In this document: positions 32,052 to 57,743 of the stretch, piece after piece
How the letters are laid out: every line of letters begins with the position of its first letter
How positions within the stretch are numbered: the first letter of the stretch is position 1
Assembly: GCF_000143415.4 (NCBI RefSeq)
Contig: NW_003314308.1
Span: 1,034,654-1,098,653, forward strand
Origin: Selaginella moellendorffii
Taxonomy: Eukaryota > Plantae > Lycopodiophyta
Direction of reading: 5' to 3'
Length of the DNA stretch: 64,000 nt
Made by a program: the position numbers and the translations under genes
Notes under the pieces: model-generated
What the model was told of the DNA's origin: nothing
Seen by the model: only the letters and a program-made list of their open reading frames with translations
Databases searched by the model: none

Positions 32052-33695
32052 TCACCGCGCAGCAGCTTCGGAACGAGCGAAAACGTCAGACAGGAGCACG
32101 AGCAAGCCCGACTGCTTCCGGTATCTCTCGTAAGCCTGGTGAGCTGCTCGAGTTCCACGCTCGGCATCGGCCTGGTTCCTGCAAGCTCCTAGCAAGGCCA
32201 GCCATCCAAGCGGCTCTCGTTCGGCTGGAATGCTGTGAACCAAGTCCTCTGCTTCGAAAACTCGGCCGGCCCGTCCCAGCAAATCCACCATGCAGACGTA
32301 GTGCTCCGCTGCCGGTTCTATGCCGTAGTCCGGGAGCATCGAAGTGAAAGAGGTCCAACCTTGGTCGAGGAGGCCTCCATAGCTACAGGCAACGAGTATG
32401 CAGCCGAAAGTCACCGAGTTTGGCAGCACACCGTCCAAGTCCATCTTCCGGGACAGCTCCAGAGCTTCCATGGAGTGCCCCTGCTGTGCGTACGCTGCTA
32501 CCAGCGTCGTCCACGTTATCACGCTCTTGAACTTCATCTCCTCGAACACGCTCCTGGCTTCCTCGAGTCGTCCACACTTGCCGTAGAGGTTCAAGAGCGT
32601 GTTTTGGACGACGAAGTCGGGCTTCCTGATACGAGAGTGAATCGCCCTGCCCTGCGCGAGCATCCCTTCGTTGGAGCACGCCGTGATGACAGTGGCGAAG
32701 GTGACGTTGTTTGGCACCACGCCTTCCAAGTCCATCTTCCGGAACAGAAGCACGGCTTGTCTCCCTTCGTCGTGCTGTGTATACGCCGAGATCATGGCTG
32801 TCCATGAGATCACGTTTCTTCTTTGCATCCGTTCGAAAACTTCCTTGGCCTCGACCAACCTGTGGCATCTGGTATACATGTCGATCAGCGCATTCTGGAT
32901 AGCATTGTTGTTGGAGTGAGTACCTGACGAGACGATCGCCTTGTGAATCTCTCTCCCTTCTTCGTAGCTGGAACAGGCACTGAGAACGCTCGAGAAGGTG
33001 TACTCGTCCGGCTTCACCCCTTCCGGCTCCATTCTGTGATATAGTTCCAGAGCCAAGCGCCTCTCACCACGCTGAGCGTACGCAGATACCATAGAGTTCC
33101 ACGACACCACGTCCTTCCGCGGCATAGCATCAAACGCAGCTCGAGCATCGTTCAAGCTCCCACACTTGGCATACATGTTGACGACAGCGTTGTGGAGGCA
33201 AACGTCGTCTCCAAGCTCCGCGGCCGCTGCTAAGATCTGTGAGTGGATCACTCGGCCATCGGAGAGAGCTTTGAGCTCCGAGCACGCGCCCAAGATCACC
33301 AAGTACGTGTATCTGCTCGGCTTCACGTCCATCGCTCTGAAAGCACCAAGTGCCTGCCTGGAATGCCCGTTCTGGGCATACGCCGCTATCAGGACAGTCC
33401 ACGAGAAGGCATTTTTTCTGACCAGGCCATCAAACACGAGCCTTGCCTTGTCGATGCCCCCGTGCTTGCCATACGCCTGGACCAGGACGTCCCCAAGAAC
33501 CACACTCTGTCCATAGCCATCTCTCACGATCTCGGCGTGCCTGTCGCATACCTCTTTGAGGCTTCCGGACCTTCTCAGCGATGAAGCATAGCTTTCCTCC
33601 TGGATTTTTCTCTCCACCACCGTAGCCACGTCGTGATGGCGATGCCGGACCAGAGATCTCCCGAGAGCAAAGCTCCGGTTCTTCACGAAGAACAT
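32052..33695 (-). CDS. PLS-E class PPR protein
   Basis: PLS triplets ending in HYVCMVDLLGRAGR..W.ALLGACR. First in-frame ATG is at 33695. Confidence 0.9.
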   Translation of the reverse strand: MFFVKNRSFALGRSLVRHRHHDVATVVERKIQEESYASSLRRSGSLKEVCDRHAEIVRDGYGQSVVLGDVLVQAYGKHGGIDKARLVFDGLVRKNAFSWTVLIAAYAQNGHSRQALGAFRAMDVKPSRYTYLVILGACSELKALSDGRVIHSQILAAAAELGDDVCLHNAVVNMYAKCGSLNDARAAFDAMPRKDVVSWNSMVSAYAQRGERRLALELYHRMEPEGVKPDEYTFSSVLSACSSYEEGREIHKAIVSSGTHSNNNAIQNALIDMYTRCHRLVEAKEVFERMQRRNVISWTAMISAYTQHDEGRQAVLLFRKMDLEGVVPNNVTFATVITACSNEGMLAQGRAIHSRIRKPDFVVQNTLLNLYGKCGRLEEARSVFEEMKFKSVITWTTLVAAYAQQGHSMEALELSRKMDLDGVLPNSVTFGCILVACSYGGLLDQGWTSFTSMLPDYGIEPAAEHYVCMVDLLGRAGRVFEAEDLVHSIPAEREPLGWLALLGACRNQADAERGTRAAHQAYERYRKQSGLLVLLSDVFARSEAAAR

Positions 33696-33728
33696 CACCA
33701 CAGCCGATCCATCGCGACGAACTTTCTG

Positions 33729-35553
33729 CTAAGCTGGTCGATTGGAAGGAATGAGCTGGTTGTCCGCGCATAGCTTGGGAATCGGCCTCATCTTGTTGAG
33801 AAGCTCGAACGTTCTCGCATTCGGTGCCACTTTGTCTGTTGCCATGCGCTGCAAGAACCGGTACGCATGCTTGCCGGCGTTCACGTATGCCTCGAGCAAA
33901 CTGTTGTAAGCCGCTACGTTCTTGTTGTATGATTCCCTCCTCATGTCCTGGAAGAGAAGCTCCGCGCTGCTCACGTCGGCGTTTTTCGCGTGTTCTTTCA
34001 GGATGAGCATCACGGTGTCGAAGCACGGCGGGACGCGCTCCTCGAACATCCTGTTGAGTGTCTCGGCTGCCATCTTCGGATTTCCAGACTTCATGTATCC
34101 CGCAACCAAATGGTGATAGCTGAGATTGTTGATATGCCCGTTTCCATGCCGGATTCTCTCGAGCAGCTTCTCGGCCTTTCCCATCTCACCACCTTCGCAG
34201 TACGCACGAAACAATGGGACGTAGTGCGCCGGTCTCAACAGAGTTCTCTTCTCGGTCAGCTCCGCAAACACCTTCTCGGCCCTGTCGATCCGTCCCACTT
34301 TCTCGTAAGCTGCTATAGTAGCAACATAGCTGTTTGCCGAGACCACTGGAAACCTTCGCGTGAATCTCCATATCCTGTCGATCATATCGGCTCTTCCCAT
34401 TGCAGCGTAGAGTGCTATCACCTTATCGTGAACTCTCCGGCTCTCTTGAAACTCCTCGCTGGCCACCGCCTCTTTCAAGTATGCCATAGCTTTCTCGTGA
34501 TCACCAGCGTTCACGTATCCCGACGCGAGCGTGCAAAGTATCTCGCAGTTTGGAGTTCCATCTCCATCGCACTTCATTTTGCTGAAGAGTCTTTCCATGC
34601 CTTCGGTGTCGCCCTTCTTGGCCTTTATCCCGATGAGGATGTTGTAAGTCTCGACGTTTGGAGAGATGCGCATGTCTCTCATCTCCCTGAGAATCACTGG
34701 AATGCCGTCCTCTTTCTTCTTGTTGGCATAGAGATGGAAGAGCTTGTTAAACGCCGTGGCGGTGGTGAGGAGGTTCTTCTCCTTCATCAGCTTGAGCACC
34801 AGCCTTGCCTTTGAAAGGAGCGAGTGAATCACGTAGTTCTCGAACATGGTGATGAGAGCAGCCTCAGATTTGGCATAGACGCGCGGCATTTTGGTAAGGA
34901 GGAAGTTCTTCGCAGCGTTCATGTTGACGACCCGTCCGGTAAGGTCCAAATGGTTGATGAAATGGAACTTTTGAAGCTCCAAACTTCTCTCTTTGATCAC
35001 CCAGTCCGAGATCTGGAAGAACTCTATGTTAGAACTCTACTCGATCTTTCAAAGACAAAGAAGAGCTCTCTATCTACTCAAACTTCCCAAGAACAAAGCA
35101 GAGCTCTCTAAGATATAGAATGAAACATACCTCGTAAGCTTGCTTGAATCTTCCAAGCCATTTTAGACGCTTCATAGCAGCAATGATCTCCCCGTGGCTC
35201 TCCCGGCCTTCCGCGATCCACTGATGCAAAATGTGTAGCACAGGTCCTCCTTTATCATCTTCGAGCCTTGCGACGAGAGAATTCGGGTCCACATTGTCCT
35301 CGTCGTCGCTCGGGGTGACTCTACTGGCATCGTAACGCAAATCATTCTCCTCAGTGCCCCAGTAGCGATCATGCTCGTCGCTCTTCCTGTTCCTCACAAT
35401 ATCCTGTTTGGGCCTTCCTCTCAAATCCCTCGAGAAACTCAAGCTCCTCGCAAAATCCAGCACCTGCGCGATTCTCCTTCCAGGAGCCACGGAATAGCCT
35501 AGAAGATCCTTTCCTTGCAGCGCATTCCTGGAGACGATCATCCATGCTCGCAT
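33729..35553 (-). CDS. P-class PPR protein (intron 35130-35013)
   Basis: Presequence-like N-terminus, QAYE|ISDW splice, P repeats (SPNVETYNILI etc.). Confidence 0.88.
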
Positions 35554-35763
35554 TGCGCGGAGAATTCAGCGCCAGGAATCCATTTCCTTGCTTGCTCACA
35601 AACCCTAATAAAAACCTAGCCAACGGTCAGATATGGGGCTTACGAAATCAACGGCTGGGATCGAAGATGGGAAGGGGCCAAAAGTTTTGCCCAAAACCCT
35701 TCGAAATATTTTGGGGCGGGACGGATGGGAAGAGGAGCTGGGAATCGCAATCTCAAATCGGCG

Positions 35764-36782
35764 ATGCCCGGGGCGCTCGATCTCCCGGAGTCGATCATCG
35801 CGTCGATCCTCTCTCACACTTCTCCAGGTGATGTAGCAAGGCTAGCGCTCGTGAATCGAGCTTTCAGGGATGCCGGGCGCACGGACATCGTGTGGGAGCG
35901 AATGCTGCCGGTCGGCTACCACAGATTTCTCAAGCTCGCCATTTCTTCCATCGGCGGCGGTGGCAGTTCTTCCAAGCGGGAGCTGTACGAGCAGCTGTGT
36001 GGACACATTCTCATCGGAGACGGATCAGAGGTTCTTTCTCTTGGGAAAAATATTTGATCTAAGCAAGAATCCTAGTAAGAAGCGCTTTCTTTAGGTGATC
36101 CTCTCTGGCTCATAAATTTTTTTCTCGCTTTCTCCAGGGCTTATGGATCGATCGAGCTACTGCGGCTGTTTGCCACAGCTTTTCTTCGAGATCTTTGGCT
36201 GTGACTTGGGGAAGCACCGCGGAATACTGGGAATGGTCCTCAAAGCATGGCGCCAGGTACTTAAGTTCCATTCACGAAGAGTTTCTCTTCTCATGGATTT
36301 TTCTTGCTTCGCTACCACAAAGATTTGGCGAGGTGGCGCACCTCAAGATGGTTTGCTGGCTAGAGCTCTCTGGGAACTGGAAGTTGAGCCTAGCTCCAGG
36401 AACTTACACCGTCTCTTGGAGACTCCAGCTCGATTCCGACGCCTTTGGGTGGGATAAGGAACCAGTGAGATTCAGCTTGGCAACTCTAGACGGAAGGGTG
36501 ACGAACTCTTCGTGCTACCTGGTGGACTCCGAGGGGCTGGATCGAAGCAGCAGTGACGAGTCGGAAGAAGACGACGAGCCTGTCAGCATGGTTGCTCGAG
36601 CTCGGACGGTGGCGGACAATTGGGTGGAGTATGATGTGGGACAGATTGTCGTGGAGGACGAGGATGAATTGGGTGAAGTGGAGCTTTTCTTCTCGCTACA
36701 GGAGATCGTCAGTGGCACTTGGAAAGGTGGACTTTTTATTGACGGGGTCATTGTCCAGCCCAGTCACCTCATTGTGGAGTAG
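35764..36782 (+). CDS. F-box protein with phloem protein 2 (PP2/Nictaba-like) domain; introns ~36031-36138 and ~36258-36321
   Basis: LDLPESIIASILSHTSPGDVARLALV (F-box); VTWG...YWEW, FGEVAHL.MVCWLE and WKGGLFIDGV (PP2). Confidence 0.9.
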
Positions 36783-36875
36783 GGTTCTTGAGGGCGCTTC
36801 CATTCCAGGTTTGGGAACTTCTGTTCGTGGGTCTTTGGTCTTGAATTGTTCTGTGTCTTTCAAGGATCCAGCGCC

Positions 36876-38723
36876 ATGGATAGCGGAGTTGCCGAAGGTG
36901 CGTGAATCTTCTTGTTTTTCCTGGAGCTAAGTGTTCTTACATGAGTGCTTCCAGGTGCTGGGAAAGTGTACATTGATGGCAACATGCTTGCCGTCAAGGC
37001 TCTTGCAGCAGCAGGAGTGGAGACCATGTACGGCGTCGTTGGCATTCCGGTGACCTCTCTCGCGACTTACGCCATGAAGGTTGGGATAAAGTTCATCGCT
37101 TTCCGGAATGAGCAATCAGCGGGATATGCAGCGTCAGCAGCTGGTTTTCTGACTGGTAAACCGGGAGTTTTGCTCACAGTCTCGGGACCAGGTTGCGTGC
37201 ACGGGCTTGCGGGTCTGAGCAATGCAATGATCAATACGTGGCCCCTGGTGATGATCTCTGGGTCCTGCACGCAGAAGGATATAGGGAAAGGTGACTTCCA
37301 GGAGCTTGATCAGATGGAAGCTGTGAAACCGTTTGTCAAATACTCGGGCAAGGCTAGCCAGATTTCTGAGGTTCCCGAGGTCGTATCTAAAGCTTTTCAA
37401 GTCGCTCTGGAAGACCAGCCGGGAGGGACATACATCGATCTTCCTTCCGACGTTCTTCATGAGAACATTTCCGTCGAGGAGGCCGAGAAGTTGCTTGCGG
37501 GGGTGAAGGCTGCGAAGCCGATGTTCTCTCGCGAGCTGGAGTGCCACTGTTCCGAGTCAGACATTCAGGAGGCGTTGTCTCTACTCCACAAAGCCGAGAA
37601 GCCGCTGGTGGTTTTCGGGAAAGGTGCAGCTTTAAGCCGTGCGGAAGGTGCGATCAAGCAGTTTGTCGAACGGTCAGGAATACCATTTCTAGCAACACCA
37701 ATGGGCAAGGGAGTCATTTCGGACACGCACCATCTTTCTGCTGGGGCTGCTCGTTCGCTGGCACTCCGTGAGAGTGATGTTGCACTGGTAATTGGAGCTA
37801 GATTAAACTGGCTACTACACTTCGGCGAGCCTCCACAGTGGTCCGATTCCGTTAAGTTCATCTTGGTCAACACTTCTAAAGAGGAAATGGAACTACGACG
37901 CCCGGCTGTGAAACTCGTTGGCGATGCAAGGATGGTTATGACGGACCTAAACAAACAGTGGAAGGACTCTCCTTTCTCTCTAGGCGACAAGCATCCTTGG
38001 GTGGAGAAGTTGAAGAACAAAGCCAGTGACAGCGTCGAGAAGATGGCTGCGAGGCTGAAGCAGGACGTCGTTCCTTTCAACTTTTTGACTCCGTTGAGGA
38101 TTATTCGCGATGCGATCTCGTCTTTAGGCTCGCCAACTCCTATCCTCGTCTCCGAGGGAGCGAACACCATGGATATAGGACGGACTGTCTTTCAACAGCT
38201 AGAGCCTCGAACGAGACTAGACGCTGGTACATGGGGAACGATGGGTATCGGGATGGGCTATGCAATTGCCGCTGCCGTGGAATCACCAGGGCGCTTAGTT
38301 GTTGCTGTCGAGGGAGACTCTGGCTTTGGCTTCAGTGGTTTCGAACTGGAGGTACGTCTTTTTTTTTCTTTACGCTAAGTAGCATGGTTTCTTATGTTTT
38401 GGCTGCAGACAATAGTTCGATACAACCTCCCGATCGTGGTGATCATCTTTAACAACGATGGAGTGTATGGTGGCGATCGGAGGACTCCGGAAGACAAAGA
38501 GGGCCCACTCAAGGACTTCCCGGCACCGACGTCCTTCATTCCGTGCGCTCGCTATGACAAAGTGATGGAAGCGTTCGGTGGCAGTGGCTACTTTGTGAAA
38601 GAGCCCAAGGAGCTGGAGTCTGCAGTGAACGAGGCATTTGCAAGCAAGAAGCCAGCTCTGATCAACGTTAGAATCGATCCATTTGCCGGCTCGGAGAGCG
38701 GCAGAATGCATCACAAGAACTAA
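36876..38723 (+). CDS. HACL: 2-hydroxyacyl-CoA lyase / oxalyl-CoA decarboxylase-like ThDP enzyme; introns 36898-36954 and ~38352-38408
   Basis: MYGVVGIPV, FRNEQSAGYAA, LDAGTWGTMG and ThDP motif GDSGFGFSG..E..IIFNN. Confidence 0.92.
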
Positions 38724-38797
38724 ACCCGGCACAGGTTTGCGTGTCTAGTGTTTTTCACTACTACTCTTTCCATGTAAAATAACAGGTTCCAGGGAAT

Positions 38798-40932
38798 TCA
38801 GAGAGCCTCAGTTGCTTGGGCCTCAGACTTGTCCCCGGACTTCATCTTCCGGAGCTCACTGAAGAGGATATCAGTCTTCGCGTTCGGCCGTGCACCGTCC
38901 TGGAGCATCCTCTCAACGAATCCATACGCCGGTCTCTTGGCATTCACGTAAGCCAGCAGCAGCTTGTTATACACCGCACTGTTCACCCAGTAACCCGCCA
39001 GCTTCCAGTCCTCGAGGATCTGCTCGGCCCTCTCCACGTCCGGGATCGCAGCCAGAGCTCCGAGAACAAGCGTTAGAGAAGCAGGCAGCGGCCTCGACCT
39101 CGGGTTCCTGGTACCAGTCACCTGGGACTCCCTCAACCAAGTGATCGCTTCCTCGGTATTGCCAGCTTTGAGGTACATGTCGACGAGGTGGAAGTAGCAC
39201 CAGGGATCCATCTGGACGCCGAGCTCCTCCTTCATCCTGCGCACCAGCTCTTCGGCCCGAGCAGTTAGCCCGAGGATGGAGTAGACGTACAACATGGCAC
39301 TGAACATCGGGGAGCTGCCAAGTTTTCCCAGGCTCTCGGCGTCCTTGAACAGCCTCTCGGCCCTCTCGACTTCACCGAGCTTCCCCCACGACTTGATGAC
39401 GCAGATGAAGTCCTGGCTGATCGGGTCCCCGAGCTTGAGCAGCTCCTTCCAGGCTCGCTGGACGCCGGCCGGGTTCTTGACGGTGGCGTACATGGTGATG
39501 AGCGTGTTGTAGGCGGTCCGGAGCTTTGGAAACTGGCCGATCTCCATACCGTGCTCGATGGTCTGGAGGACAGCGAGAGCTTTGTCGAAGAGCTCGTCGC
39601 TGGCGTAGCAGCTCGCCATGGTCACGTAGGTGGAGATGTGGGCTTTCTCGTGCCGGCTCGACTTGATGCCTTGGAAGGCTTGCTCCGCGGACTCGATGCC
39701 TTCGACCTTGTACTTGGCGGACAGAAGGATGTTCTCGGAGCACATATCCAGCTGAATCCCGAGCTCCCGAGCTTCGTCCGCAAGATTGAGCACCTTCTCC
39801 TCGAGACCTCTCCGGCGGTAGAGCGTGGCCATCAAGTTGAAGGTGTAAGGGGTGGTGATCATCTTCTCATCCCGGAGCTTTTCGTAGACGACCTCGGCCT
39901 TGCGCAGCATCTTGGACTTGGTGTATGCCAGCAGCAGCGCGTTGTAAGCCTCCTCCTTCTTGTGCTCGTCCGGGAGCTTTTGGAAGATCCTCTCGGCCAT
40001 TTGGTACCAGCCGCAACGGCCATGGAGCTCCACTCTGCGAATGTCGTCCTTGATCTCGTGAGGAACTGGCTTCTTCGCTGCCATCCAGTTCGCGATCTGT
40101 GCAACAAAGAAGAACAAAATGAGTCGACAAGAACTTGGAAGCTCTAAGATGAAGTTGGTATCATCCAGGAGGTAGGAAGTTTCTTCGAGAGGGATGGAAG
40201 CTTGGAGGAACTCGAATGGATCATGGTCTACAAGAACTTGGAAGCTCTTGATCACTATAGAAGCTTGGAAGAACTGGAATGGCGTGCTCAAAGAAAGAGA
40301 AGAAGAGATTCTAAGAACTTCGTATCATCCAGGAGGTAGCAAGACCTTACTCTAGAAGCTTGGAAGAACTCGAATGGAGGAGTGAGCAAAGAAAGAGGAG
40401 AAGAGCTTCTTACCTTGACGGCATGGACGTGGCGATTGCGCTTCTTGAGCTTGCGAATGACGAACAAGAAGGTGTGCTTGGTGGCCAGGTTTCCCTCCTT
40501 GATCCACTTCCTCACCTCGGGGACAACCAGCGAGACCTGTGTGCGCTTGAGCCTGGCGATGTTACTGGCGAGATGCGTCGCCGCCGGGTAATCCACATCG
40601 TCCCAGTAGTCATTCTCCTCGTACTGATCCTCCTCCTCCTGCTCCTCCTCGATGTCGTGAATCGACCGCGTGTCCAGCTCCGAATCGCTGCTCTCCTCCT
40701 GCTCTGCCAGCATCTCCTTGATCATGGATGATTCCGACTGGCAGCGCGCTGTGGCGATCCCGGAGATGGATCTTCTGGAGGGAGAAGAGAGGAGGAGAGG
40801 ATAGAAGTGGCACCTGCTTAAATTCGAGAATGACGGTGGCCTCGCGATGACGTCGAGCGAATACGAGCAAGAAATCGAAGAGAATGCCGCCATAGCTCGG
40901 CACACTCGCAATCCTCCACTGCTCATACCCAT
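38798..40932 (-). CDS. P-class PPR protein, probable plastid transit peptide (intron 40413-40097)
   Basis: Ser-rich N-terminus, acidic tract, HAVK|IANW splice, P repeats. Confidence 0.88.
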
Positions 40933-41031
40933 TTCAAGGTTTGGGGTTTATCTTCCCCAAGAACCCTAATTCACATTAAACAAATAATTCACAAATAAAG
41001 CTTTTATTAACCAAAGTAATTTTCATGGCAT

Positions 41032-41103
41032 GGAGGTATAGCTCAGTGGTAGAGCAATCGGCTGCAGTCCGATAGGTCACCAGTTCGATCCTGGTTGCCT
41101 CCT
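41032..41103 (+). tRNA. tRNA-Cys (GCA)
   Basis: Acceptor stem GGAGGTA/TGCCTCC, D arm TAGCTCAGTGGTAGAGC, anticodon arm ATCGG-CTGCAGT-CCGAT, T loop GTTCGATC, U73 discriminator, downstream T-runs. Confidence 0.95.
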
Positions 41104-41183
41104 AATAGTCTTTTGCGACTTTAAATTTAATTGGACTACTTTTTACTTTTTTACTGCAGGATTTTAGGGATTAGGGTTTTGCG

Positions 41184-43120
41184 ATGAGAGGATGGATGCT
41201 GCTGCGACGGATTTCCCAGGCCGGGCAATGCAGCCTCTTGCGGCGCGATGCGGGCAGCGATCGATCGTTCTCCAGCATTCTTGCCGCCAGAGCGCATTCT
41301 TTCTCTGTTTCTAGCCGGAGCGCGGAGGAGCAGGATGATTTCTCCGATACCGACACCGGTTTTGCGCACAAGCTCGCCAAGCAGGCGGCTAAGATGGAAT
41401 CTCCCAAGCTCGTGGATCTGTGTAACAAGATTGCGGCGCTGCGGCCAAGGGATTCCGGTCACGTAGTGCCGATGTTGAAGGAATGGGAAGAGGAAGGCAA
41501 TGTGCTCGACAAGGAGATGCTTCGAGCGATCATGCTCAAGCTCCGGAAGTGGAAGCGTGGATCTCTCGCCCTCGAGGTACTGTACAAACAATGCGAATTC
41601 TTCCTTTGGTTCCTTCTTTTGTTTTCTCCCTTGTAATGTTGTGCTACCATTTTTTTTCCCGGTGATTCTTTCGTTTCTCGAGTTTTTCTTCTATTATTCA
41701 AGAATTTCACTCCTTTTTTTCCTTGACTTGATCGTTCTCCTCGTTCCTTTCTTGAGAAATTACTTTCTTTCCAATGACGAATGCTCAAAGTTTTTGGTTT
41801 TTCTAACTTTCTCACATTCGAACTCCACAGGTTGCCGATTGGATGTATTACACAAAACAGTTCCCGCAGGATCTGGACGACGTTATCCTCCGAATGGACA
41901 TGGCTGTGCGTGCCAAAAAGATCCGGAGAGCTCAGAAGATTTTCAAGAAGCTTCAGGCTTGGGAAAAGACGACCGACGCGTACAACACGATGTTCTTGAT
42001 CTTCTCCCAGCGCAAGATGATCCTCCATGCCGACGACTTCTACTACAAGTTTAAGGAGGCCAAGCTGAAGCCCAACGATATCACTTTCAGCATACTGGCT
42101 TGCCTCTACCGGCGGTGTGGCCTGCACAACAAGGTGGTGAGGCTCCAGGAAGATATCGAGGCAGCAGGCATGAAGCCGTGCGTTTGCTTCCTGAACAACT
42201 TGATGGTGTCCAAGTACGAGCTTCACGGGATTTCTTCGGCCGAAGAGATTTTCAACCAACTGGTTCCTGCGGGATCTGACCTCAAACGCTCGCACTTGTC
42301 TACGTACTCGATGATGGCTGCCTCGTATTTGTCCGCGGGAATGCACGACAAGGCCCAGAACTTGTTAGAGGTGATCGAGAAAGCCATGGACCAAGGCAGC
42401 TTTCCAAAGCTGCGGAGGACGTATCACATACTTATCTCCATGTACAGCACCATGAAGAACAGGGATGGTATGGAGAGAGTCTGGAAGAAGATCGAAGACT
42501 TGAAAGCGCAGGACTACGTTGCTATGATCGAATCTTGTGGTCGAGCAGACGAGGTTGGTTCCGCCGAGAAGTACTTCAAGGAGGCGGACAGGAAAGGCTT
42601 GCTCAACCAGCCATCCTTGTTTGCGGCACTCTTAGGCGTCTACGCTGGGAAAGGACAGGCAGACAAGGCCGAAAAGCTCTTCAAGAAGATGAAAGAACAG
42701 GATGTTTCCCGGGACGCGCTGTGCTACCACTACATCATTCTTGCTAACCTCAACGCCAGAAACATCGATCGCGCGGTGGAAATCTTGGAGCTAGCAGAGG
42801 CTGCTGGAATGCGGGATGGACGCTCGAGGCCATTCCTAGGAACGTTTTGTGACGTTCTCAAAACGATTGCCAGAGAGACAGGGGATGTAGCTCTGGCCGA
42901 GACATTGCTGGCGGACTGGAGGAAGGGAAAGTATAGAACCGACATCGCGGTCTACAATCATCTTCTTCGGGTCTACTTGAAAGCTGGGAAGCAAGTCCAA
43001 GGCCCCTTCCTCAAGAGACTGGCTGGGAACAACATGAAACCCACACGCGAAACTCACCAGCTGCTCCAGCAGCTCAGTGACGCTGGCGGAGAAGTCGTGA
43101 CTGGCAACTATTATCTCTAG
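41184..43120 (+). CDS. P-class PPR protein, probable mitochondrial presequence (intron 41577-41830)
   Basis: LALE|VADW splice; P repeats. Confidence 0.88.
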
Positions 43121-43197
43121 ATTATCAGGTACATGGTTTACCTTTTCTTTCTTTTGGTGATGTGGGTCATTGTGAGCTGAGTTCTTTCTTGCAGGGA

Positions 43198-45012
43198 ATG
43201 TTGGCTGCTGTCATCGTTGTTCCAGTTGCGACGACCTTCGTTGCAAATCCTTGGAGCAGAAATAGAGCCAGGTGTCCGGCTTTAGTTTCAGCTCCATGGC
43301 TGGCTGGGGCAGCAGCCAGCCGGACAGCTACACAGGTTTTGGGTTCGCAACACATCGCACAACAGGCTAGACAGCAGGAAGAGGAGGACGAAGAGGACTA
43401 CGGTGCACAGAAAGAAGACTATGAGGATGTCGAGGATGAAGAAGATGCGGCCGATGAGCTGGGGAAGATTTACGAAAAGGATGAAGCCCGGCTGGCTGGT
43501 GTAGATTTTAGCGCTGCCCAGCAGCTGTTGGAGGCTATTTGCGAGCTCAAAGACGAGCAATACATTCGCGTCCAGAGAATTGTGAGAGGATGGCTCAGGT
43601 CGAGAGACGTGGAAGTGGGGAAGCACGAGTTTGTATACGTGATGAGGCGACTGAGAAAGCGCAAGAGAGTCAAGCATGCACTAGAGGTACTGAGTGTTTC
43701 TATTTTTTTCCTTTGAAGATGGATTGTTTTCTTTTCTTTTCAGATTGCGGACTGGATGGCTCTCTCGAGACCAAGACCCTTCACTCTAACTACGAAGGAC
43801 AATATTTTTCGAATGGACCTGGCTTCTCGCTGCGGATCTGTTGGCAAGGCCGAGAGGATCTTTGAGCGTCTCGCACCAGAGCACAGGTCCGAAGTTGCTT
43901 ACAACGCTCTTCTTCTCAGCTACACCAAGAAAAAAAAACGGGGACGGGCCGAGAGACTTTTCAAAGAACTCAAAGCCACTGGTACCATCTCGTCATGCTA
44001 CAGCCTGAACCTCCTGGCTTCGATGTATCGCCAGCTCCGCCTAGACGCGGAAGTTCTTATGTTGGCAAAGGAAGCACAGAAGTTGGGAGTTGAGCTCGAT
44101 ATGTGCTTCTACAACCTCCTCCTTCCAGCAAAGTTTAGAGTCCAGGGCCTGGAAGACGTTGAGAAGCTCTACGCTACAATCACTTCTCCCAGGGACAGGA
44201 CACGGTTCTTCACTTGCCTGGCCATGGCAAACATTTACGTCTCGGCTGGGAGGAACGACAAAGTGCTAGAGATGCTGGAGCTAATCGACCAAGGAATGGA
44301 AGCAGGGACGATAGTAAAGCAGCGCAGGAGATACAACGTCCTCATTTCCATGTACGCTTCGCTCGAAGACGGTGCTCGGGTGGAGAGGACGTGGGAGAGG
44401 CTTAAGCAGCAGCGACAGCCAAACACCGAGGACTACTGCTGCATCATCCGAGCCTGGGGGAAGCTTGGACACGTCGTCAGAGCCGAGACGATCTTCCAGG
44501 TAGCCGAAGCCAACGAGAAGAGCCTCAAGTACTCGACGGTGTTTAACGCCATGATGTTCGTCTACTCGGTCGCGGGGATGCGCGAAGAGGCCGAGGGGCT
44601 GGTCCGGAGGATGGAGTACGAGCTGGGTGTGAAGCTGGATCCGTGGTGCTACCACCATCTAGTGCTGCTCTACGCCAAGGCCGGAGACATCGGAAAGATG
44701 CTATCGACTTTGAGAGCTGCTCAAGCCTGTGGGAAGAAAGAGCGGCGATTCACGCCGCTGGCGGCTACTCTGTGGGCTGCTCTCAACACTCTGGCGGATG
44801 CCGGGGACGTGGATACCGCCGAGGAGACGCTGACGAGGTGGAAGAGGTCGGGCTACCGGGTTACCACGGGGTTGTATAACAGGCTACTCAGGGCACACTT
44901 GGTTGCGGCCAGGCCAACGGAGAGATTCGTGGAGAGGATGCTTGCGGATGGAGTCGTGCCCAATGGTGAGACGGAGAAGCTGTTCAATGAGCTCAAGATG
45001 AAACTATCGTAA
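43198..45012 (+). CDS. P-class PPR protein (intron 43687-43743)
   Basis: Transit peptide plus acidic tract, HALE|IADW splice; close paralog of the 38798-40932 gene (shared DPWCY and LDMC blocks). Confidence 0.88.
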
Positions 45013-45268
45013 GCATCGTATCAAGTTTACATGGTGAAGGAGTGATGAACAGAATGTTAGCGAAGAACTTTGGTGGTGGAGATCCAAGTGTTGCAAAGAA
45101 CGCAAAGAATGGAAATACAATTTAGAGAATGAGAGAACAAGGAGGCCTTGTTCTTCATCTCTATATACAAGAACACCTTAAATTCTTCTTCACTGGAATA
45201 TTTAAGCATATTCTACACAAAGGGTTTAGGGTTTATCACTGTAAGAGGAATATTCTCTAAATATCCCC

Positions 45269-47420: not shown

Positions 47421-47493
47421 CGCCGCGCTTGGCGTCCCAGCCGATGCATCGCTGATAAACCCTAAACCCGGCCGGATTTTAGGGTTCTTGGGG
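47421..47493. promoter_or_regulatory. Very compact bidirectional promoter with opposed telo-boxes
   Basis: TAAACCCTAAACCC-GGCCGG-ATTTTAGGGTT lies between divergent ATGs at 47420 and 47494. Confidence 0.6.
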
Positions 47494-49173
47494 ATGGGAG
47501 CTGGAAGAGCGACGCTGCGTATCGCCAGGGCTGCGAGGTAAGACACCGATCACTAGTATGAGAGTGTAACTCGCTCACTTGCTCCTCCAGATTTCTTCTC
47601 AGGCCGGCAGCGAGCACGCCTATCGCTCGACCAAGAGCGGCATTCTCGTTTCTTGGCGAAAGGAATGTGGAGACAGTAGCCAGGGGTTGGATGAGCTCTG
47701 GATTCTATCTCCAGCAGCAGCGGCATTACACCGACGATGTGGAGTTCCAGGATGCTGGGGACGATCTCGTGGTTTACGATCCAAGAGCGTCGCGGAGGTC
47801 TCAAGGGAGCGGTGACGCTCTTGAGGACCTGTGGACAAAAGTGGATTACTCACAGGATCCAGTGTTGGGGATCAAACAGTGGGAGAGATCCGGCAACAAG
47901 CTCACGAGATCGATGCTCGCTATGCTTCTTCAAAGAATGAGGTGCCGACGAATGCACACCAAGTCCGTCCAGGTGAGACCTCTCAAGTTACTTGTTCTTC
48001 TCGCTCAAGAGTGATCGATCGGTTTTTTTTTCTTGTGGATAGATTCTTTCATGGCTCGTCGAGAAAAAACCCATCGAGGTGACCGAAGGAGACTACGAGC
48101 AGCTGGTCACCTTGGCTTGCCGCGACTCGGACTATGAGACCGCAGAGAAGTATTTCTATAGTCTCCCGAGTCACTTGAGCAAGTGGCCAGCGTTTTCGGC
48201 GCTCGTCGCCGGCTACGCATCCAGGAACTTGATGGCAAAGGCCGAGAACTTGATGAGAACGGGGACCTCGCCTCTGCCGCAGCCATACTCGGCGATGATT
48301 CTCATGTACATCCGGAGGGCCGAGTACCAGAAGATCGTCAAGATCTACAAGAGTATGAAGGCGGACGGGATAGAGCCCAACGTGATAACTTACGCGGTGC
48401 TGCTGAAGTTCAAGGACAGGATCGGGCCGATCAAAGGACTGGAACAAGACGTTGAGGACGCGCTGGGAAAGATCAAACTCAGTGAGATGTGCGCTGCGAA
48501 GAGGCCAGCGATTGCCGGGAACATGATGCACTGCTACGCGATGCTTGGGAAGCTGGACAAAGTGGAAGAAGTGTGGCAGCAAATGGACCAAGAGCGTCGG
48601 CTCCCAGAAGGTTTCTTCGTCATGGCAATTGAGTCTCTTGCGCTACTGGGACAAGTGACCAAAGCTGAGAAGGTTGCACAGATGAAACCAACCGCGAACG
48701 TCCAGGCTCGGCTCTTACAGGCACTGGCTCGTCACTTCGCCAAGCAAGGAAACATGAAGAGAGTGGAGGAAATGCTGGGCCGTGCCGACAGATACGAGCT
48801 GACACCATCTTTCGGGATTTACAACTATCTCGTCACCGGGTACTTGGCCAGGAAGGACCCCCAGACTGCGGCCTCGAGGATGAGATTGGCGTTGAAAGTG
48901 GTGACCGAAGAGCGAGCAGTGCCATCTTATGCCGCTGTCACGGGATTGCTTCCATATCTAGCAGCGGAGAAAGACGTGACGACTGCCGAGCAAATGGTGC
49001 GGAGGTATAGAGGCTGGACGGATGACAACTTCCACAAGCTGCTCCTTAATGTCTATGTAGAAGCTGGGAAAGGACCGTCTCCGGACATAAAGTCGAGGTT
49101 CAGGCGCCTTCCCTGCGTTGGTCACGTCGAAGCCAGGCGGCTGGCTATCAAGGCCTTCGCGTTAGAACCATAG
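47494..49173 (+). CDS. P-class PPR protein; introns 47538-47590 and 47973-48042
   Basis: Spliced presequence MGAGRATLRIARAAR|FLLRP, KSVQ|ILSW splice, P repeats. Confidence 0.82.
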
Positions 49174-49639
49174 CCATTGCTGCGGTGATACTACGACTAC
49201 TGGTAACTATACCCGTCTCTCTTTAGCCGGCTGGTCCTGACTCTTTTGTTCAAATCCAGGAGTACTTTTCTTCTCTTTGCGATGTCAAACGGACCTCGTA
49301 GCTGCGGTTATGCGCATTACCCATCGACCGAAGTTAGTAACGAAGATCTGACGGCTGCGGATGTTCCTGATTGGATCCGACGGCTCCCGGCGGTGTAATA
49401 AATTGCCATCTGAAATAGACATGACCTAGGGTTACAACAGAGATGGGGAGATGGGGAGACGGTGATGTATGTGCGTACGCCTCGATGTGCGATCATGTTA
49501 TGTAATTAGCGTCTTGTGATTCTGGCAGTCATAAATCATGACGGTGGTTTGGAAGATTTCGATTCAGGTATCAAATTGTGGATTCTCTTAGATCCTGGCC
49601 AAAGGTGTCCTTAGAGGAGGCAGAAAAGAGCGAGGCTGG

Positions 49640-51099: not shown

Positions 51100-51820
51100 T
51101 TGGACAAAGTGGAAGAAGTGTGGCAGCAAATGGACCAAGCTCCCAGAAGGTTTCTTCGTCATGGCAATTGAGTCTCTCGCGCTACTGGGATAAGTGACCA
51201 AAGCTGACCACAAACGTCCAGGCTCGGCTCTTACAAGCACTGGCTCGTCACTTCGCCAAGCAAGGAAACATGAAGAGAGTGGAGGAAATGCTGGGCCTTG
51301 CCGATAGATACGAGCTGACACCATCTTTCGGGATTTACAACTATCTCTTCACCAGGTACTTGGCCAGGAAGGACCCCCAGACGGATGAGATTGGCGTTGA
51401 AAGTGGTGACCGAAGAGCGAGCAGTGCCATCTTATGCCGCTGTCACGGGATTGCTTCCATATCTAGCAGCGGAGAAAGACGTGACGACTGCCGAGCAAAT
51501 GGTGCGGAGGTATAGAGGCTGGACGGATGACAACTTCCACAAGCTGCTCCTTAATGTCTATGTAGAAGCTGGGAAAGGACCGTCTCCGGACATAAAGTCG
51601 AGGTTCAGGCGCCTTCCCTGCGTTGGTCACGTTGAAGCCAGGCGGCTGGCTATCAAGGCCTTCGTGTTAGAACCATAGCGATTGCTGCGGTGATACTACG
51701 ACTACTGGTAACTATATCCGTCTCTCTTTTGCCGGCTGGTCCTGACTCTTTTGTTCAAATCCAGGAGTACTTTTCTTCTCTTAGCGACGTCAAACGGACC
51801 TCCTCGTAGCTGCGGTTATG
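51100..51820 (+). pseudogene. Duplicated 3' part and 3' flank of the 47494-49173 PPR gene, with deletions and stops
   Basis: Near-identical to ~48553-49312. Confidence 0.88.
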
Positions 51821-51946
51821 CAAGTTCTTATTGAGACGAATGGCCGAGGTCTACAAAACCGAGCAAACCAGCTTGCCTTGGCTGAAGTGATCATCATACA
51901 AGCGGCTGCCGATAAGATTTCAAGGAGAAGAGAGCTGTACAGGGAG

Positions 51947-53444: not shown

Positions 53445-54984
53445 CTAGTAGACGTGAGAATCTAGCCTTGGACGGGGAATCGCCACCAGAGGTTGAGTCT
53501 TTTGGCACACCAATCCAAAAGTCTCAGCCATATCCATCTTTGCAGGATCTTGGTCGAGCTCCCAGTCAAATCCTTGGACAAGCATCGCCACTCCAATCCG
53601 GACAGTATCAAGGCCGAGCTTGGCGCCGGGGCAGACTCTCCTCCCAGTTCCAAATGGAACGAAGTGGAAGTTTTGGCCAAACACGTCGATGTCCTGCTCG
53701 ATGAATCGCTGTGGCCGGAACTCCAGAGGCTCTTTCCAGAACTTCCCGTCCATCCCGATCGAGTAGCTGCTCAGGTAGACCAAGGCCCCGGCTGGGATCG
53801 TGAAGCCACCGAGCTTGATCGGCCCTCCTTCGACGAGCTTGGGATTGATGAGCGGCGTCACTTGGTGGAGCCTCAGTGTCTCCTTGGCTATGGCCTCCAC
53901 GTATGGAAGCTTGGGCAGGTCCGAGTCCTCCACAAGCCTTTGCGACCCGACAACGTCGTCGATCTCGCGTCGAGCTCTCGAGAGCTCGGCTGGATGGCGG
54001 AGAAGTTCCGCCATGGCCCATTCTACCGAGAGAGCCGAGCTATCAACTGCGCCAAGCAAGATATCCTGCGTGATCTAGCGTCAGGGAGGAGAAATCCAAG
54101 AGGAGGAGAACACTTACGAGCAAAAGCGTGATCTTGGTCGTGTCCGAGAGCTCGTCCATGGAGATGAGCACGTCGATGAACGCCATGGGCTCCTCGTCGG
54201 TGGTGACAACCCGAGGATTCTCTCGCCGGTCTCGCAAGATGGAGAAGAGGTGGCGATTCAGCTTGTCCGTGAGCTGCTTGTACTGCTTCTCCAGGCCCTG
54301 GACGTCCAGCCACCGTAGCCAGGGGATGTAATCGCTCACGTTGAAGATCCCGACCAACCTTATTGTCTCGACGATGGCTCGCACGAATTCCTGGCTGGAT
54401 CCACAGAAGGAGCGCTCGCCGAAGAGCCTGTAAGCTATGATGTTCATGTTGAAGTCGTGGAACTTTTCGCGCAGGAGCACCGGATTTCCCTGCTCGTCGC
54501 GGATGGATCGAGCGAGGCGGTGCTGCTCTTCCCGGCGAATCCCATCGCAGATCCTCAGCCGCGCCGGCGATAGCAAGTGAGTGTTGATGAGTTTCCTGTA
54601 GAGCTTCACCTGTGGAGTGTAGGAACTGAAGATTATGCCGCTGGAATCGTTGCCAAAGTACTTGCTACAGATCAGCGAAGGTTTCGACGAACACTGGAGG
54701 CTGTGGAGCTTGAATATCTCGCTGGCTGCTCGCGCGGAGCTGATGATCACGGCGGAGGCCCTGCCGAGCTTCAGGTGCATGACGTCGCCGTGCTTGCGAG
54801 AGAGCTTTTGAAGGGAGATGTGAGGGAGCGAGCCGAGCCTGTGGAGGCTGCCAATGACGGGGAGATTGAAGGGGCCGGGAGGGAGACGATCTCCATCGCG
54901 TCTTCTTCCTCTTCTAGAGCCAGCGAAGTACAAGAGGGGCATCAAAGCGACCAGCATCAAGGCACACAAAGTTGCAAGATCCAT
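53445..54984 (-). CDS. Cytochrome P450 (CYP71-clan-like), intron ~54117-54067
   Basis: N-terminal anchor, LPPGPFNLPVIG, KETLR, F.PQRF and heme motif PFGTGRRVCPG; single phase-0 intron before the I-helix. Confidence 0.93.
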
Positions 54985-55160
54985 AGCTTGGAAGAACACA
55001 AATTTTTGGTGAATCTGGAAGAACACACTCTAGCTAGAACTGTCCAGAGATATAGATTTCTCACTGGCTTTGCATCATTGGAAAGTACTGTTCCCGAGCA
55101 CACGGTATCAAAAAAAATCTAGAGCTTTGACTAGAACAGTCAACTCTAGTCCAATAGTGG

Positions 55161-56831
55161 TCAACGTAAGTTATCGCACGGTCTGGATGATTCTCGCAGC
55201 TCCCGAGATCGTGGAAACTTGCTGTGGAACACCCAGCTACCACTCGAGAACAAGTGTACGTAAGCTCCAGCATCCTTGGAGCTGCGCAGCTCAAACAGCT
55301 TCTCGATCGCGAGCGATGCCAGATCCCTGTTCTTGTGAGCCTTGCAAGCAGCGGCCGCCAAGCACGTCCACTCCATCGCGTCTGGCTCGAAAGGCATGCT
55401 CTCGATCAGCTCCGCGGCATCGCCCAGGAACCCGGCTCGAGCGATGAGATCGACCAAGCAGCAGTAGTGGAACTTGGTAGCATCCAGACCGTGGTCGACT
55501 CGCATCGAACGAAACAGGGATCGGCCAGTGTAAGCGTCTCCACCATAGCTGCAAGCCACCAGGACACTGACGAAGGTCGTCTCGTCGGGAGAGCACTGCC
55601 AGCAGCACCTCATCCATCCAAAACTCTCGAGTGCTCGATCGGGATGCCCGTTCTGGGCGTAGGAAGCGAGAACAACGTTCCACGAGACCAAGTCGTGCTC
55701 TTCGGCCGTGTCAAACAGGCTCCTCACTCGCTCGAGATGCCCGTTCTTGGCATAAGCGACGAGCATAGAGTTCCAAGACACCATGTTTCTCTCTGGCATC
55801 GTTTCAAAAACCTGTCTTGCTTCGTCAACATAGCCGTCGAGAGCGTAAGCGCAGAGAATCGCTGTCCAGGAGACGAGATCCTTCCTCTCCATCCCATCAA
55901 AGAACTCTTTTGCGAGCTCCAACCTTCCGTGACGAACATACGCGGAGAGAAGAACGTTCCAGGAGAAGAGATCCCACTCTGGAAACCGATCCAACAGGAT
56001 CCTTGCCTGCTCGAGATCTCCCTTGGAAGCATAGGCCGAGAGCAGCGACGTCCAGGAAACGATGTTGGTCTCTTCCATCTCATCGAAGACGGTTCTCGCG
56101 TCGTTGAGTCGGCCGTGCCGGACGTAGCCCGATAGCATCGTCGAGCACGAAACGATATCTCTTTCCGGAACACCGTGAAACAGCTTCTCTGCTTCTTCCA
56201 GATATTCGTTCTCGGTGTTTGCAGCGAGCATCGCCGACCAGGAAACTAAATCTCGCTCCGGCATCTGGATGAAGCAAGCTCTAGCTTCGTCGATGCAGTT
56301 CTTCTTCGCGTAAGTCACCACCATGCTCGTCCAGGAAATCAAGTTCCTCTCTGGCATTGAATCGAAGATGTTCTTGGCCTCGTCGACAAGTCCCCGCTGA
56401 GCATAAGCCGCGAGAATGGCGTTCCAGGAAACCATGTTTCTCTCTTGCATGGAATCAAACACTTGCTTTGCTTCGTCCAGATGCCCGTTGCGAGAATAAG
56501 CTGTGAGCATTGCCGTCCAGGCATACAAGTCCCACTGTTCCATGGCGTCAAAGATCTGCTTCGCTTGTAGCAGCTGCCCCGTCTGGGCATAAGTCGACAG
56601 CATCACCACCCAAGAGCAAACGTCCTTGCAAGTGATCGTTTGGAAGAACTCCCAGGCTTGTTCAATGCTGCCGAGCTTGGCATATTTCTGGAGGAGCTTG
56701 TTCGAAAGGTGCGTGTCACTGCTTAGAAGGTGGCGTAATCGAGAGCGAGCCTGGCGTGTCATCGAAAGGCTTGTGCACGAATCTATCAACGCGACGGGAT
56801 TGATCAACGCCAAGTTGGCAGCGTTCATCAT
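55161..56831 (-). CDS. PLS-class PPR protein with a long SS-motif run and E domain
   Basis: ~31-aa repeats (ERN.VSWN..L.AYA..G...A...F..M); HYCCLVDLIARAG; no DYW. Confidence 0.9.
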   Translation of the reverse strand: MMNAANLALINPVALIDSCTSLSMTRQARSRLRHLLSSDTHLSNKLLQKYAKLGSIEQAWEFFQTITCKDVCSWVVMLSTYAQTGQLLQAKQIFDAMEQWDLYAWTAMLTAYSRNGHLDEAKQVFDSMQERNMVSWNAILAAYAQRGLVDEAKNIFDSMPERNLISWTSMVVTYAKKNCIDEARACFIQMPERDLVSWSAMLAANTENEYLEEAEKLFHGVPERDIVSCSTMLSGYVRHGRLNDARTVFDEMEETNIVSWTSLLSAYASKGDLEQARILLDRFPEWDLFSWNVLLSAYVRHGRLELAKEFFDGMERKDLVSWTAILCAYALDGYVDEARQVFETMPERNMVSWNSMLVAYAKNGHLERVRSLFDTAEEHDLVSWNVVLASYAQNGHPDRALESFGWMRCCWQCSPDETTFVSVLVACSYGGDAYTGRSLFRSMRVDHGLDATKFHYCCLVDLIARAGFLGDAAELIESMPFEPDAMEWTCLAAAACKAHKNRDLASLAIEKLFELRSSKDAGAYVHLFSSGSWVFHSKFPRSRELRESSRPCDNLR

Positions 56832-56915
56832 CTTCCTGGGTCAAGAAATTAAAAAAAAATTCGTCAGTAAACCATGAGGAGTTTGCTAGTAAAGAACTCC
56901 AACCTTTACGCGTCT

Positions 56916-57743
56916 CTAGCATTTCTTCTTGAGAATGTAAACATCAGCCTCCTCAAAAGCGTAGTCGGGATGGAGCTGGGAACGATCGACTTTTTCGACG
57001 GCGAATCTCTCTGGACAAAGCCTCCAAAACAACTCGTGAGCCTCAGGTGATCTCACCTGGTATCCCAAAAGAATCAAACTGTCCGGCCCAGAGACATCGC
57101 TCATCGTTTGTAGCAAAGGCTCCACTCCATTCTCGATATATACCACATCCGCCGCGATCACCACGTCGAATGGAGGCTTCAAGCTCTCGATTTGTTGCTT
57201 GTTTCCCCAGTTAAGCTGTGCCACCTTCTCAAGAAAAAAGACAACAAAATATGTGTTAGAACGAAGCCACGAGCAAAGACAACGAAAACAAAGAAAAGTA
57301 GAAATGAAAGATCACTAGAGAGAGCGAAGAACGAAGGAAAGAAGTGTGTGATCCATCTAGATTACAAGTGAGAGGAAAAAATGCTATCGATCGATCGCTC
57401 ATACCTTTACTTTCTTCTTGGAGGAGAGCGATGTCGCAAGGACATTCTTCTTCACATTCCTCTTGAGCGTGGAGAGAACCGGCGGCACATCCGTGAGCAG
57501 CACCTGGCCGAGGCCCAGCAACGCCAACGCCAGGCCAGCGCCGCCACACCCAGCCCCGAGCTCAATCCCCCGCTTGCCCTGGATCCTCTCGCGAATCCCG
57601 CCCTGCCGCTCCGCCCATTTCGCCAGCACTAGCGAGCACGGCCACACCGTCGTCCCGACGTGCATCGATCCATTGTCCTGCTCCATGGCGATCTCCTCAT
57701 TGCCGATCGCGAGCTTCACCACTGGCCACGACGAATATTTCAT
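56916..57743 (-). CDS. METTL21-like lysine methyltransferase (Methyltransf_16 type), one intron ~57403-57225
   Basis: GTTVWPCSLVLA, IELGAGCG, LLTD, LNWG and DVVIAADVVY motifs. Confidence 0.9.

What the first reader, a model, noticed from the sequence alone, without database searches (positions are those of the whole stretch)
32052..57743. Recurrent intron-bridged gene pairs: candidate spliced polycistronic (operon-like) mRNAs in a land plant
Seen: four same-strand junctions have stop-to-start gaps of only 33-93 bp. In three, the gap is mostly a canonical 56-68-nt GT-AG intron, the same size class as the coding introns here, leaving 11, 16 and 37 nt after splicing. All three spliced spacers put the downstream ORF out of frame, so these are not readthrough fusions. 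Each unit begins at a promoter-like spacer. Known: polycistronic nuclear mRNAs occur in green algae but are considered exceptional in land plants. Inference: a donor 8-26 nt after a stop codon needs a transcript arriving from within the upstream CDS, and there is no room for a 3'UTR plus a promoter. Candidate units are PPR-P>PPR-PLS, F-box>HACL, PPR-P>PPR-P and METTL21>PPR-PLS(>P450).
Basis: partly seen in the sequence, partly recalled or inferred. Interest (0 to 1): 0.88.

Follow-up and report, generated by a model that had tools for sequence, protein, structure and literature searches.

The report
Spliced read-through gene pairs in spikemoss
In the spikemoss Selaginella moellendorffii, four pairs of neighbouring genes sit so close (11-37 bases apart after splicing) that the first gene's RNA appears to run on into the second; such read-through is known in Arabidopsis as a rare by-product, here it looks built in, but whether one RNA makes both proteins is unproven and the less likely reading.

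Summary
The window is S. moellendorffii scaffold GL377612.1. At the PPR>PPR junction, RNA contigs from two studies run unbroken through both ORFs with the 66-nt post-stop intron removed, and a third shows the same joint. RefSeq's 1138-aa fusion splice is not seen. The other three junctions were not read-tested.

The operon reading is only partly supported. Upstream ORFs carry 13-40 AUGs, which rules out algal-type leaky scanning. Other 78-109-nt gaps in this genome hold their own telo-box, and one overlaps the F-box stop just before HACL. Best reading (0.45): intergenic-splicing read-through as described in Arabidopsis (PMC9768141), with the second gene mainly made from its own embedded start. 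Rivals: both ORFs translated from one mRNA (0.25), or two overlapping monocistronic mRNAs merged by assembly (0.25).

This scan has noted many similar pairs elsewhere in this genome (unchecked AI notes), and I saw three more in other loci. I found no paper on this in Selaginella. Long reads, CAGE and Ribo-seq would decide.

The parts
33729..35553 (-). Unit 1 ORF1: P-type PPR, 568 aa, intron 35013-35130
   Evidence: RefSeq 568 aa; pN/pS 0.15
33696..33728 (-). Junction 1: 33-nt spacer, no intron, in frame; mini-ORF MDRLW (33712-33695) whose TGA overlaps the next ATG
   Evidence: identical in haplotype 2; not tested with reads
32052..33695 (-). Unit 1 ORF2: PLS-type PPR, 547 aa, no intron
   Evidence: pN/pS 0.35
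35600..35608 (.). Telo-box in the divergent spacer shared by units 1 and 2
35725..36782 (+). Unit 2 ORF1: F-box/PP2 protein, 294 aa (281 aa from ATG 35764), introns 36031-36137 and 36257-36322
   Evidence: pN/pS 0.15
36757..36787 (+). Candidate embedded promoter of HACL: site II-like AGCCCA at 36757 and telo-box variant TAGGGTTC at 36780 overlapping the F-box stop
   Evidence: 0 such telo-box motifs in 18,886 nt of other coding sequence; same in haplotype 2; function inferred
36809..36864 (+). Junction 2 intron, 56 nt, leaves 37-nt spacer
   Evidence: used in RefSeq XP_024541758.1 and XP_024543388.1; matrix score 16.7, p 0.0045
36876..38723 (+). Unit 2 ORF2: 2-hydroxyacyl-CoA lyase / oxalyl-CoA decarboxylase, 577 aa, two 57-nt introns
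   Evidence: pN/pS 0.21
41164..41179 (+). Double telo-box just before unit 3; the X1 contig starts at 41185 with adapter
41184..43120 (+). Unit 3 ORF1: P-type PPR, 560 aa, intron 41577-41830
   Evidence: pN/pS 0.08
43129..43194 (+). Junction 3 intron, 66 nt, donor 8 nt after the stop, leaves 11-nt spacer
   Evidence: spliced in contigs of runs X1 and X5, loose end with the joint in X6
43198..45012 (+). Unit 3 ORF2: P-type PPR, 585 aa, own transit-peptide-like N-terminus, intron 43687-43743
   Evidence: pN/pS 0.21
57758..57765 (-). Telo-box variant TTAGGGCT 22 nt before the METTL21 ATG, in a 100-nt same-strand gap
56916..57743 (-). Unit 4 ORF1: lysine methyltransferase (Methyltransf_16, METTL21-like), 216 aa, intron 57228-57404
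   Evidence: separate 215-aa model in haplotype 2
56836..56903 (-). Junction 4 intron, 68 nt (63 in haplotype 2), leaves 16-nt spacer in both
   Evidence: not tested with reads
55161..56831 (-). Unit 4 ORF2: PLS-type PPR, 556 aa, no intron
   Evidence: pN/pS 0.47
53445..54984 (-). Cytochrome P450, 176 nt after unit 4; probably its own unit (not tested)

Best explanation
Genome compaction has pushed gene 2 into the space where gene 1's 3' end would be. Gene 1 starts at its own telo-box promoter, finds no 3' end after its stop, and an intron between the genes removes what spacer there is, so its mRNA continues through ORF2 to the shared poly(A) site. That mRNA has two ORFs but probably only ORF1 is translated from it, ORF2 serving as a 1.7-1.8 kb 3' UTR that may expose it to nonsense-mediated decay. 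ORF2 protein comes mainly from a shorter mRNA with the same 3' end, started at a promoter embedded in the end of ORF1 or in the spacer. Shown: the spliced joint at junction 3, intact ORFs under selection, motif positions. Inferred: single-molecule continuity, the embedded starts, which ORF is translated, NMD.
For: Single 3445-nt and 3357-nt contigs span both PPR ORFs with all three introns removed, and no listed contig covers the spacer intron in X1 or X5. ORF1s hold 13-40 AUGs, 15-23 per kb, like the ORF2s, so scanning cannot reach ORF2. Telo-box variant plus site II-like motif at the F-box end; telo-boxes mostly lie within 50 nt of the start site in plant translation-related genes (PMC3022908). 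In X6 an ORF2 contig begins inside the intron at 43177, and in X15 ORF2 is covered from 43243 with no contig on the junction. Five runs hold 0.49-0.54 of the words of 35500-38900, what HACL alone would give (0.54), against 0.76-0.78 in the deepest runs (0.81 expected for the whole unit); weak, since the part held is unknown. In Arabidopsis 202 of 271 second genes have their own start and 7 of 8 second ORFs were rarely translated (PMC9768141).
Against: Three of four second genes have no telo-box within 150 nt of the ATG while all four first genes do, though many ordinary genes in the sample also lack one. If ORF1's only mRNA were an NMD target, three conserved genes would depend on an unstable message. 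Contigs cannot show a start, an end or a single molecule. The depth step in X15 (4-6 on ORF1, 39-51 on ORF2) fits, but the tool says depth must not be used to rank parts of a gene. Only one junction of four was read-tested.
Confidence: 0.45

Rival explanations
1. True bicistronic mRNAs: one promoter, one poly(A) site, both proteins made from one molecule, ORF2 by reinitiation after ORF1 terminates (or by internal entry). The intron trims the spacer to 11-37 nt to keep the two ORFs coupled, and translating ORF2 shields the message from NMD.
For: Spliced spacers of 11-37 nt match the algal bicistronic range (median 40 nt in Auxenochlorella, PMC11892635), are AUG-free at junctions 2-4, and have the same length in both haplotypes. 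Unbroken spliced contigs. No telo-box at three second genes. Junction 1 has a TGATG stop-start overlap from a mini-ORF. Both ORFs under purifying selection.
Against: ORF1s are 651-1707 nt with many AUGs, unlike algal ORF1s (medians 291-600 nt, AUG-poor). Reinitiation falls with ORF length and was rare in Arabidopsis read-throughs. A calicivirus-type UGGGA motif occurs within 120 nt of ORF2 at only one junction. Embedded telo-box at junction 2; ORF2-only contigs in X6 and X15.
Confidence: 0.25
2. Two ordinary overlapping monocistronic mRNAs. ORF1's mRNA is polyadenylated inside the U-rich spacer intron or a little way into ORF2; ORF2's mRNA starts inside ORF1 and splices the intron as a normal 5' leader intron. 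Short-read assembly merges the two.
For: In Arabidopsis the first gene ends inside the intergenic intron in 106 of 158 loci. UTRs here are very short: contig ends lie at the ATGs (41185, 40931) and about 76 nt after the unit-3 stop. A short poly(A) branch would probably be dropped from contigs (my knowledge of de Bruijn assemblers). Junction 2 has the order telo-box, short exon, intron, ATG seen at an ordinary gene in L006.
Against: No listed contig covers the 5' part of the intron in any of four runs, and no poly(A) loose end is listed there. In X6 and X15 ORF2 coverage starts downstream of the donor, not inside ORF1. Junction 1 has only 33 nt and no intron. No AAUAAA-like signal in the spacers, but none at the normal 3' ends either, so that test says nothing.
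Confidence: 0.25
3. In-frame fusion products: a donor 5' of the stop makes the 1138-aa double PPR that RefSeq annotates; an AUG in another frame of the F-box gives the 640-aa HACL; stop read-through joins the in-frame pair at junction 1.
For: RefSeq has the 1138-aa and 640-aa models in both haplotypes; donor 43094 reproduces 1138 aa exactly; the HACL frame stays open 318 nt upstream after splicing.
Against: No joint from 43094 in four runs; that donor scores -3.6 bits against 6.4 for the post-stop donor; ORF2 has its own transit-peptide-like N-terminus and the family's exon layout; the other plant HACLs whose N-termini I read do not share the 63-aa extension.
Confidence: 0.05

Closest known systems
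Arabidopsis read-through transcripts with intergenic splicing (Kurihara et al. 2022, PMC9768141)
   Same: An intron joins the 3' region of gene 1 to the 5' region of gene 2; organelle-targeted PPR genes are typical; some loci make mainly the read-through form.
   Different: There they are about 0.06% of long reads and most first genes have their own 3' end. Here donors lie 8-26 nt after the stop, spliced spacers are 11-37 nt, four pairs fall in 26 kb, and at junction 3 the spliced path is the only one assembled in two runs.
Exclusively bicistronic genes of green algae (Gallaher 2021, PMC7896298; PMC11892635)
   Same: Two separate, out-of-frame, conserved ORFs with a very short spacer.
   Different: Algal ORF1s are short and AUG-poor and ORF2 is reached by leaky scanning; these ORF1s are long and AUG-rich. 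A single start site and two proteins are proven there, not here.
Polycistronic-like RNAs of cotton (PMC6797763) and poplar (10.1101/2025.07.17.665350); Arabidopsis CDC26-TTM3 (as cited in PMC9768141)
   Same: Land-plant nuclear mRNAs spanning adjacent genes; enriched for organelle genes in poplar.
   Different: In cotton and poplar they coexist with normal monocistronic mRNAs. CDC26-TTM3 has a short first ORF (my knowledge).

Membership tests
Intergenic-splicing read-through loci (Arabidopsis type) | Intron spliced between the 3' region of gene 1 and the 5' region of gene 2 | tested here: met
   Junction 3 in three studies; junction 2 in a RefSeq isoform; junction 4 by sequence only; junction 1 has no intron
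Intergenic-splicing read-through loci (Arabidopsis type) | Single long reads span both ORFs | not testable with these tools
   only assembled contigs were served
Intergenic-splicing read-through loci (Arabidopsis type) | Second gene usually has its own start site | tested here: inconclusive
   telo-box at junction 2 only; ORF2-only contigs in X6, X15
Intergenic-splicing read-through loci (Arabidopsis type) | Degraded by NMD; ORF2 rarely translated | not testable with these tools
   NMD-type features present: 1.7-1.8 kb 3' region, introns 59 and 500 nt after the ORF1 stop in units 2 and 3
Green-algal exclusive bicistrons | Very short inter-ORF spacer, separate start and stop codons | tested here: met
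   11, 16, 33, 37 nt
Green-algal exclusive bicistrons | Short ORF1 with few internal AUGs, allowing leaky scanning | tested here: not met
   651-1707 nt, 13-40 AUGs, no depletion against ORF2s
Green-algal exclusive bicistrons | One start site only (no promoter mark at gene 2) | tested here: inconclusive
   motif proxy only: telo-box absent at three second genes, present at HACL
Green-algal exclusive bicistrons | Both proteins made from the one mRNA | not testable with these tools
   both ORFs are under selection, which does not show which mRNA is translated
Spliced-leader operons (nematode type) | Foreign leader trans-spliced to the acceptor before ORF2 | tested here: not met
   no foreign loose end before 43195 in four runs; the acceptor is joined in cis; contigs can drop rare forms
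In-frame gene fusion (RefSeq 1138-aa model) | Splice that skips the ORF1 stop | tested here: not met
   only the post-stop donor is seen

The most novel reading that the evidence does not exclude
Selaginella uses two-protein nuclear mRNAs genome-wide, with long, AUG-rich first ORFs, so the second ORF must be reached by efficient reinitiation after a full-length ORF (or internal entry) and the messages must escape NMD: a mechanism distinct from algal leaky scanning and not described in a land plant.
Probability: 0.25. Interest if true: 0.87.

Novelty: new variant of a known kind. Interest (0 to 1): 0.6.

Why it matters
Either outcome is useful. If one mRNA makes both proteins, this is a vascular plant with many natural bicistrons and an unexplained way of translating a second ORF, of interest for translation biology and for multigene expression in plants. 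If not, it is a land-plant genome where promoters and 3' ends are written into neighbouring coding sequence, and where a read-through form that Arabidopsis degrades may be the normal message of conserved organelle genes, which raises a testable question about NMD in this lineage. It also shows that the RefSeq annotation of this reference genome fuses or distorts such pairs (1138-aa PPR, 640-aa HACL, chromo-PPR), which affects PPR counts.

Tried and rejected
Read laying allowed one call (5,001 letters used, within the operators' limit); I spent it on junction 3 because RefSeq offered a fusion rival there, so junctions 1, 2 and 4 have no direct read test. No HACL from another Selaginella species turned up among the 42 rows put on a tree, so conservation across the genus is untested; in Diphasiastrum HACL has no annotated neighbour within 10 kb. 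The homologue search with the unit-4 PLS protein gave only distant PPRs, the METTL search of representatives gave nothing on fusions, and P0238 had no contig on record. Leaky scanning was rejected on AUG counts. A shared CATGGTTT word in the junction 3 and 4 introns was dropped because a coding intron of HACL has it too. Poly(A)-signal scanning was uninformative. Five literature searches found no report of this for Selaginella; the library lacks most subscription papers. The tRNA-Cys upstream of unit 3 is not joined to the mRNA contig, so a tRNA-mRNA dicistron has no support.
Full report
Source. The HACL exon matches Selaginella moellendorffii XP_024541758.1 at 100%. The fetched locus L001 (GL377612.1:1,061,284-1,083,376) is identical to window 26631-48723, so the window is GL377612.1:1,034,654-1,098,653. 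The second haplotype is on GL377619.1 (L003, L010).

Observation. The four pairs are a P-type PPR (568 aa) before a PLS PPR (547 aa), an F-box/PP2 protein (294 aa) before HACL (577 aa), two P-type PPRs (560 and 585 aa), and a METTL21-like methyltransferase (216 aa) before a PLS PPR (556 aa). Any 80-nt gap holds many GT..AG pairs (45 at junction 2), so I scored them with a matrix from 22 putative coding introns picked by eye from the window. The three spacer introns score like real introns, beat shuffles (p 0.0045, 0.018, 0.0035) and beat all 138 coding windows and eight ordinary 3' flanks. In the second haplotype the spacers keep their spliced length; at junction 4 the intron interior has diverged but both ends and the 16-nt spacer remain. 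Between haplotypes pN/pS is 0.08-0.47 for the seven ORFs tested, on small counts; METTL21 was not scored but is intact in both. Junction 1 differs: no intron, in frame, with a five-codon out-of-frame ORF whose stop overlaps the PLS start.

Existing annotation. RefSeq treats the junctions inconsistently. Units 1 and 4 are separate genes. HACL has an isoform of 640 aa that uses the spacer intron with an AUG inside the F-box coding sequence, indirect support for that intron. Unit 3 is one 1138-aa protein, which needs a donor at 43094, before the stop.

RNA. I laid contigs of four runs from four studies on 40700-45700. The runs are RNA by guess only, but the clean removal of GT..AG introns shows spliced RNA. 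X1 (3445 nt, 41185-44987) and X5 (3357 nt, 41254-44987) each give one contig through both ORFs with three introns removed, including 43129-43194. X6 shows the same joint as a loose end, plus an ORF2 contig that starts inside the intron at 43177. X15 has ORF1 and ORF2 contigs with a hole at 43045-43242; it also has a hole within ORF1. No joint from 43094 appears, and that donor scores -3.6 bits, so the RefSeq fusion is unsupported. The tool warns that a contig across two genes shows no single transcript and that depth cannot rank parts of a gene. I note only as a hint that X15 has depth 4-6 on ORF1 and 39-51 on ORF2. For unit 2, the share of words held by the deepest runs (0.76-0.78) is near the 0.81 expected if the whole spliced F-box and HACL are present, while five other runs hold 0.49-0.54, near the 0.54 expected for HACL alone. 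This too is a weak hint, since the part held is not shown.

Promoters. Telo-box motifs mark gene starts here: about a dozen sites in 25-60 kb and none in 18.9 kb of coding sequence. All four first genes have one within 125 nt of the ATG. Of the second genes only HACL does, at -96, overlapping the F-box stop, with a site II-like motif 23 nt before it; that pairing is a known plant promoter module (PMC3022908). Same-strand gaps of 78 and 109 nt (L005), 90 nt (L011) and 100 nt (before METTL21) carry a telo-box or variant just before the ATG, and contig ends with adapter lie at the annotated ATGs (41185, 40931). So promoters and UTRs are tiny in this genome and a short gap alone does not imply a shared mRNA. 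About half of the ordinary gene starts sampled have no telo-box, so its absence at three second genes is weak evidence.

Translation. The first ORFs have 13-40 AUGs at the same density as the second ORFs. Algal bicistrons have short, AUG-poor first ORFs and use leaky scanning (PMC11892635), which cannot work here. If ORF2 is made from the long mRNA it must be by reinitiation or internal entry. The short, AUG-free spacers would suit reinitiation, but it is inefficient after long ORFs, and no shared signal was found. A long mRNA translated only in ORF1 would carry a 1.7-1.8 kb 3' region, with downstream introns in units 2 and 3, the classic NMD triggers.

How general. In six further loci (about 140 kb) I saw GeBP before a 570-aa gene (174-nt gap, predicted intron, L004), Hikeshi before a lectin (140-nt gap, predicted 70-nt intron, L007) and a chromodomain gene before a PLS PPR (45-nt gap, fused by RefSeq, L005). 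All six loci were reached through PPR genes and two were chosen for fused models, so this is not an unbiased count, and none was read-tested. Earlier notes of this scan list many more such pairs; they are unchecked AI notes, and their follow-ups disagree: several report spliced contigs through both genes, one (RRP4/OGDH) reports overlapping, unequally expressed genes.

Known systems. The closest is the Arabidopsis class of read-through transcripts with intergenic splicing: 271 loci, 158 with such an intron, 202 second genes with their own start, second ORFs rarely translated, NMD-sensitive, about 0.06% of long reads, PPR and TPR genes typical, and a subtype that makes mainly the read-through form (PMC9768141). 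Cotton and poplar have related reports. The Selaginella pairs work like this class in anatomy; membership is shown only for the splice itself. They differ in the extreme closeness of stop and start, in density, and in that the read-through path is the only one assembled at junction 3 in two runs. They fail the ORF1 test for the algal class.

Verdict. A real feature, confirmed at RNA level at one junction of four. Most likely built-in read-through of gene 1 into gene 2 with a separate embedded start for gene 2 (0.45); true two-protein mRNAs (0.25) and plain overlap (0.25) remain open; fusion is unlikely (0.05). New variant of a known kind; interest 0.6.

Noticed in passing
L002:3445-7797 (Logan SRR33208241, unidentified plant): An AMP-binding enzyme that looks like AAE3 oxalate-CoA ligase (my recognition, Pfam AMP-binding only) lies just upstream of HACL/oxalyl-CoA decarboxylase. 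There is no in-frame ATG between them, and a donor overlapping the first stop spliced to an acceptor near 5963 would give an in-frame fusion of two consecutive oxalate-degradation enzymes. No RNA evidence.
   Followed up: partly
window 41032-41103: tRNA-Cys(GCA) sits inside the 251-nt divergent spacer between two PPR genes, 80 nt before unit 3; contigs do not join it to the mRNA.
   Followed up: partly
window 41185 and 40931: Contig ends with adapter fall on the annotated ATGs of both divergent PPR genes, so the real start codons may be the next ones (41196; 40926 or later) with leaders of about 5-10 nt. Single contig ends only.
   Followed up: no
window 47421-47494: Two PPR genes head to head with about 70 bp between ATGs and two opposed telo-boxes: a minimal bidirectional promoter.
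   Followed up: no
window 29082-49173: Cluster of seven related P-type PPR genes; at least six have a transit-peptide-like N-terminus followed by an intron, at a matching position in the three compared, probably local duplicates.
   Followed up: partly
window 51100-51830 and 31840-32160: Broken partial copies of the 3' ends of neighbouring PPR genes (of 48560-49300 and 30470-30880); the PLS gene of unit 1 ends inside the second copy.
   Followed up: no
window 46430-46930: Intron of the PPR gene at 45269-47421 is made of degenerate purine-rich repeats of about 35-40 nt that differ between haplotypes.
   Followed up: no
window 2300-9400: Two Ty1/copia-type retrotransposon pieces in opposite orientation, the minus-strand one with frameshifts.
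   Followed up: no
L004:20138-22519, L005:10001-12998, L011:2169-9448: RefSeq models that appear to fuse separate genes: Ctr+GeBP, chromo+PPR, BCAS3+MORN; the first and last have a telo-box before the second gene.
   Followed up: partly
window 63376-63870 (L010:1131-1615): A small Cmc1 gene converges on the subtilase and, as annotated in haplotype 2, overlaps its 3' coding end.
   Followed up: no
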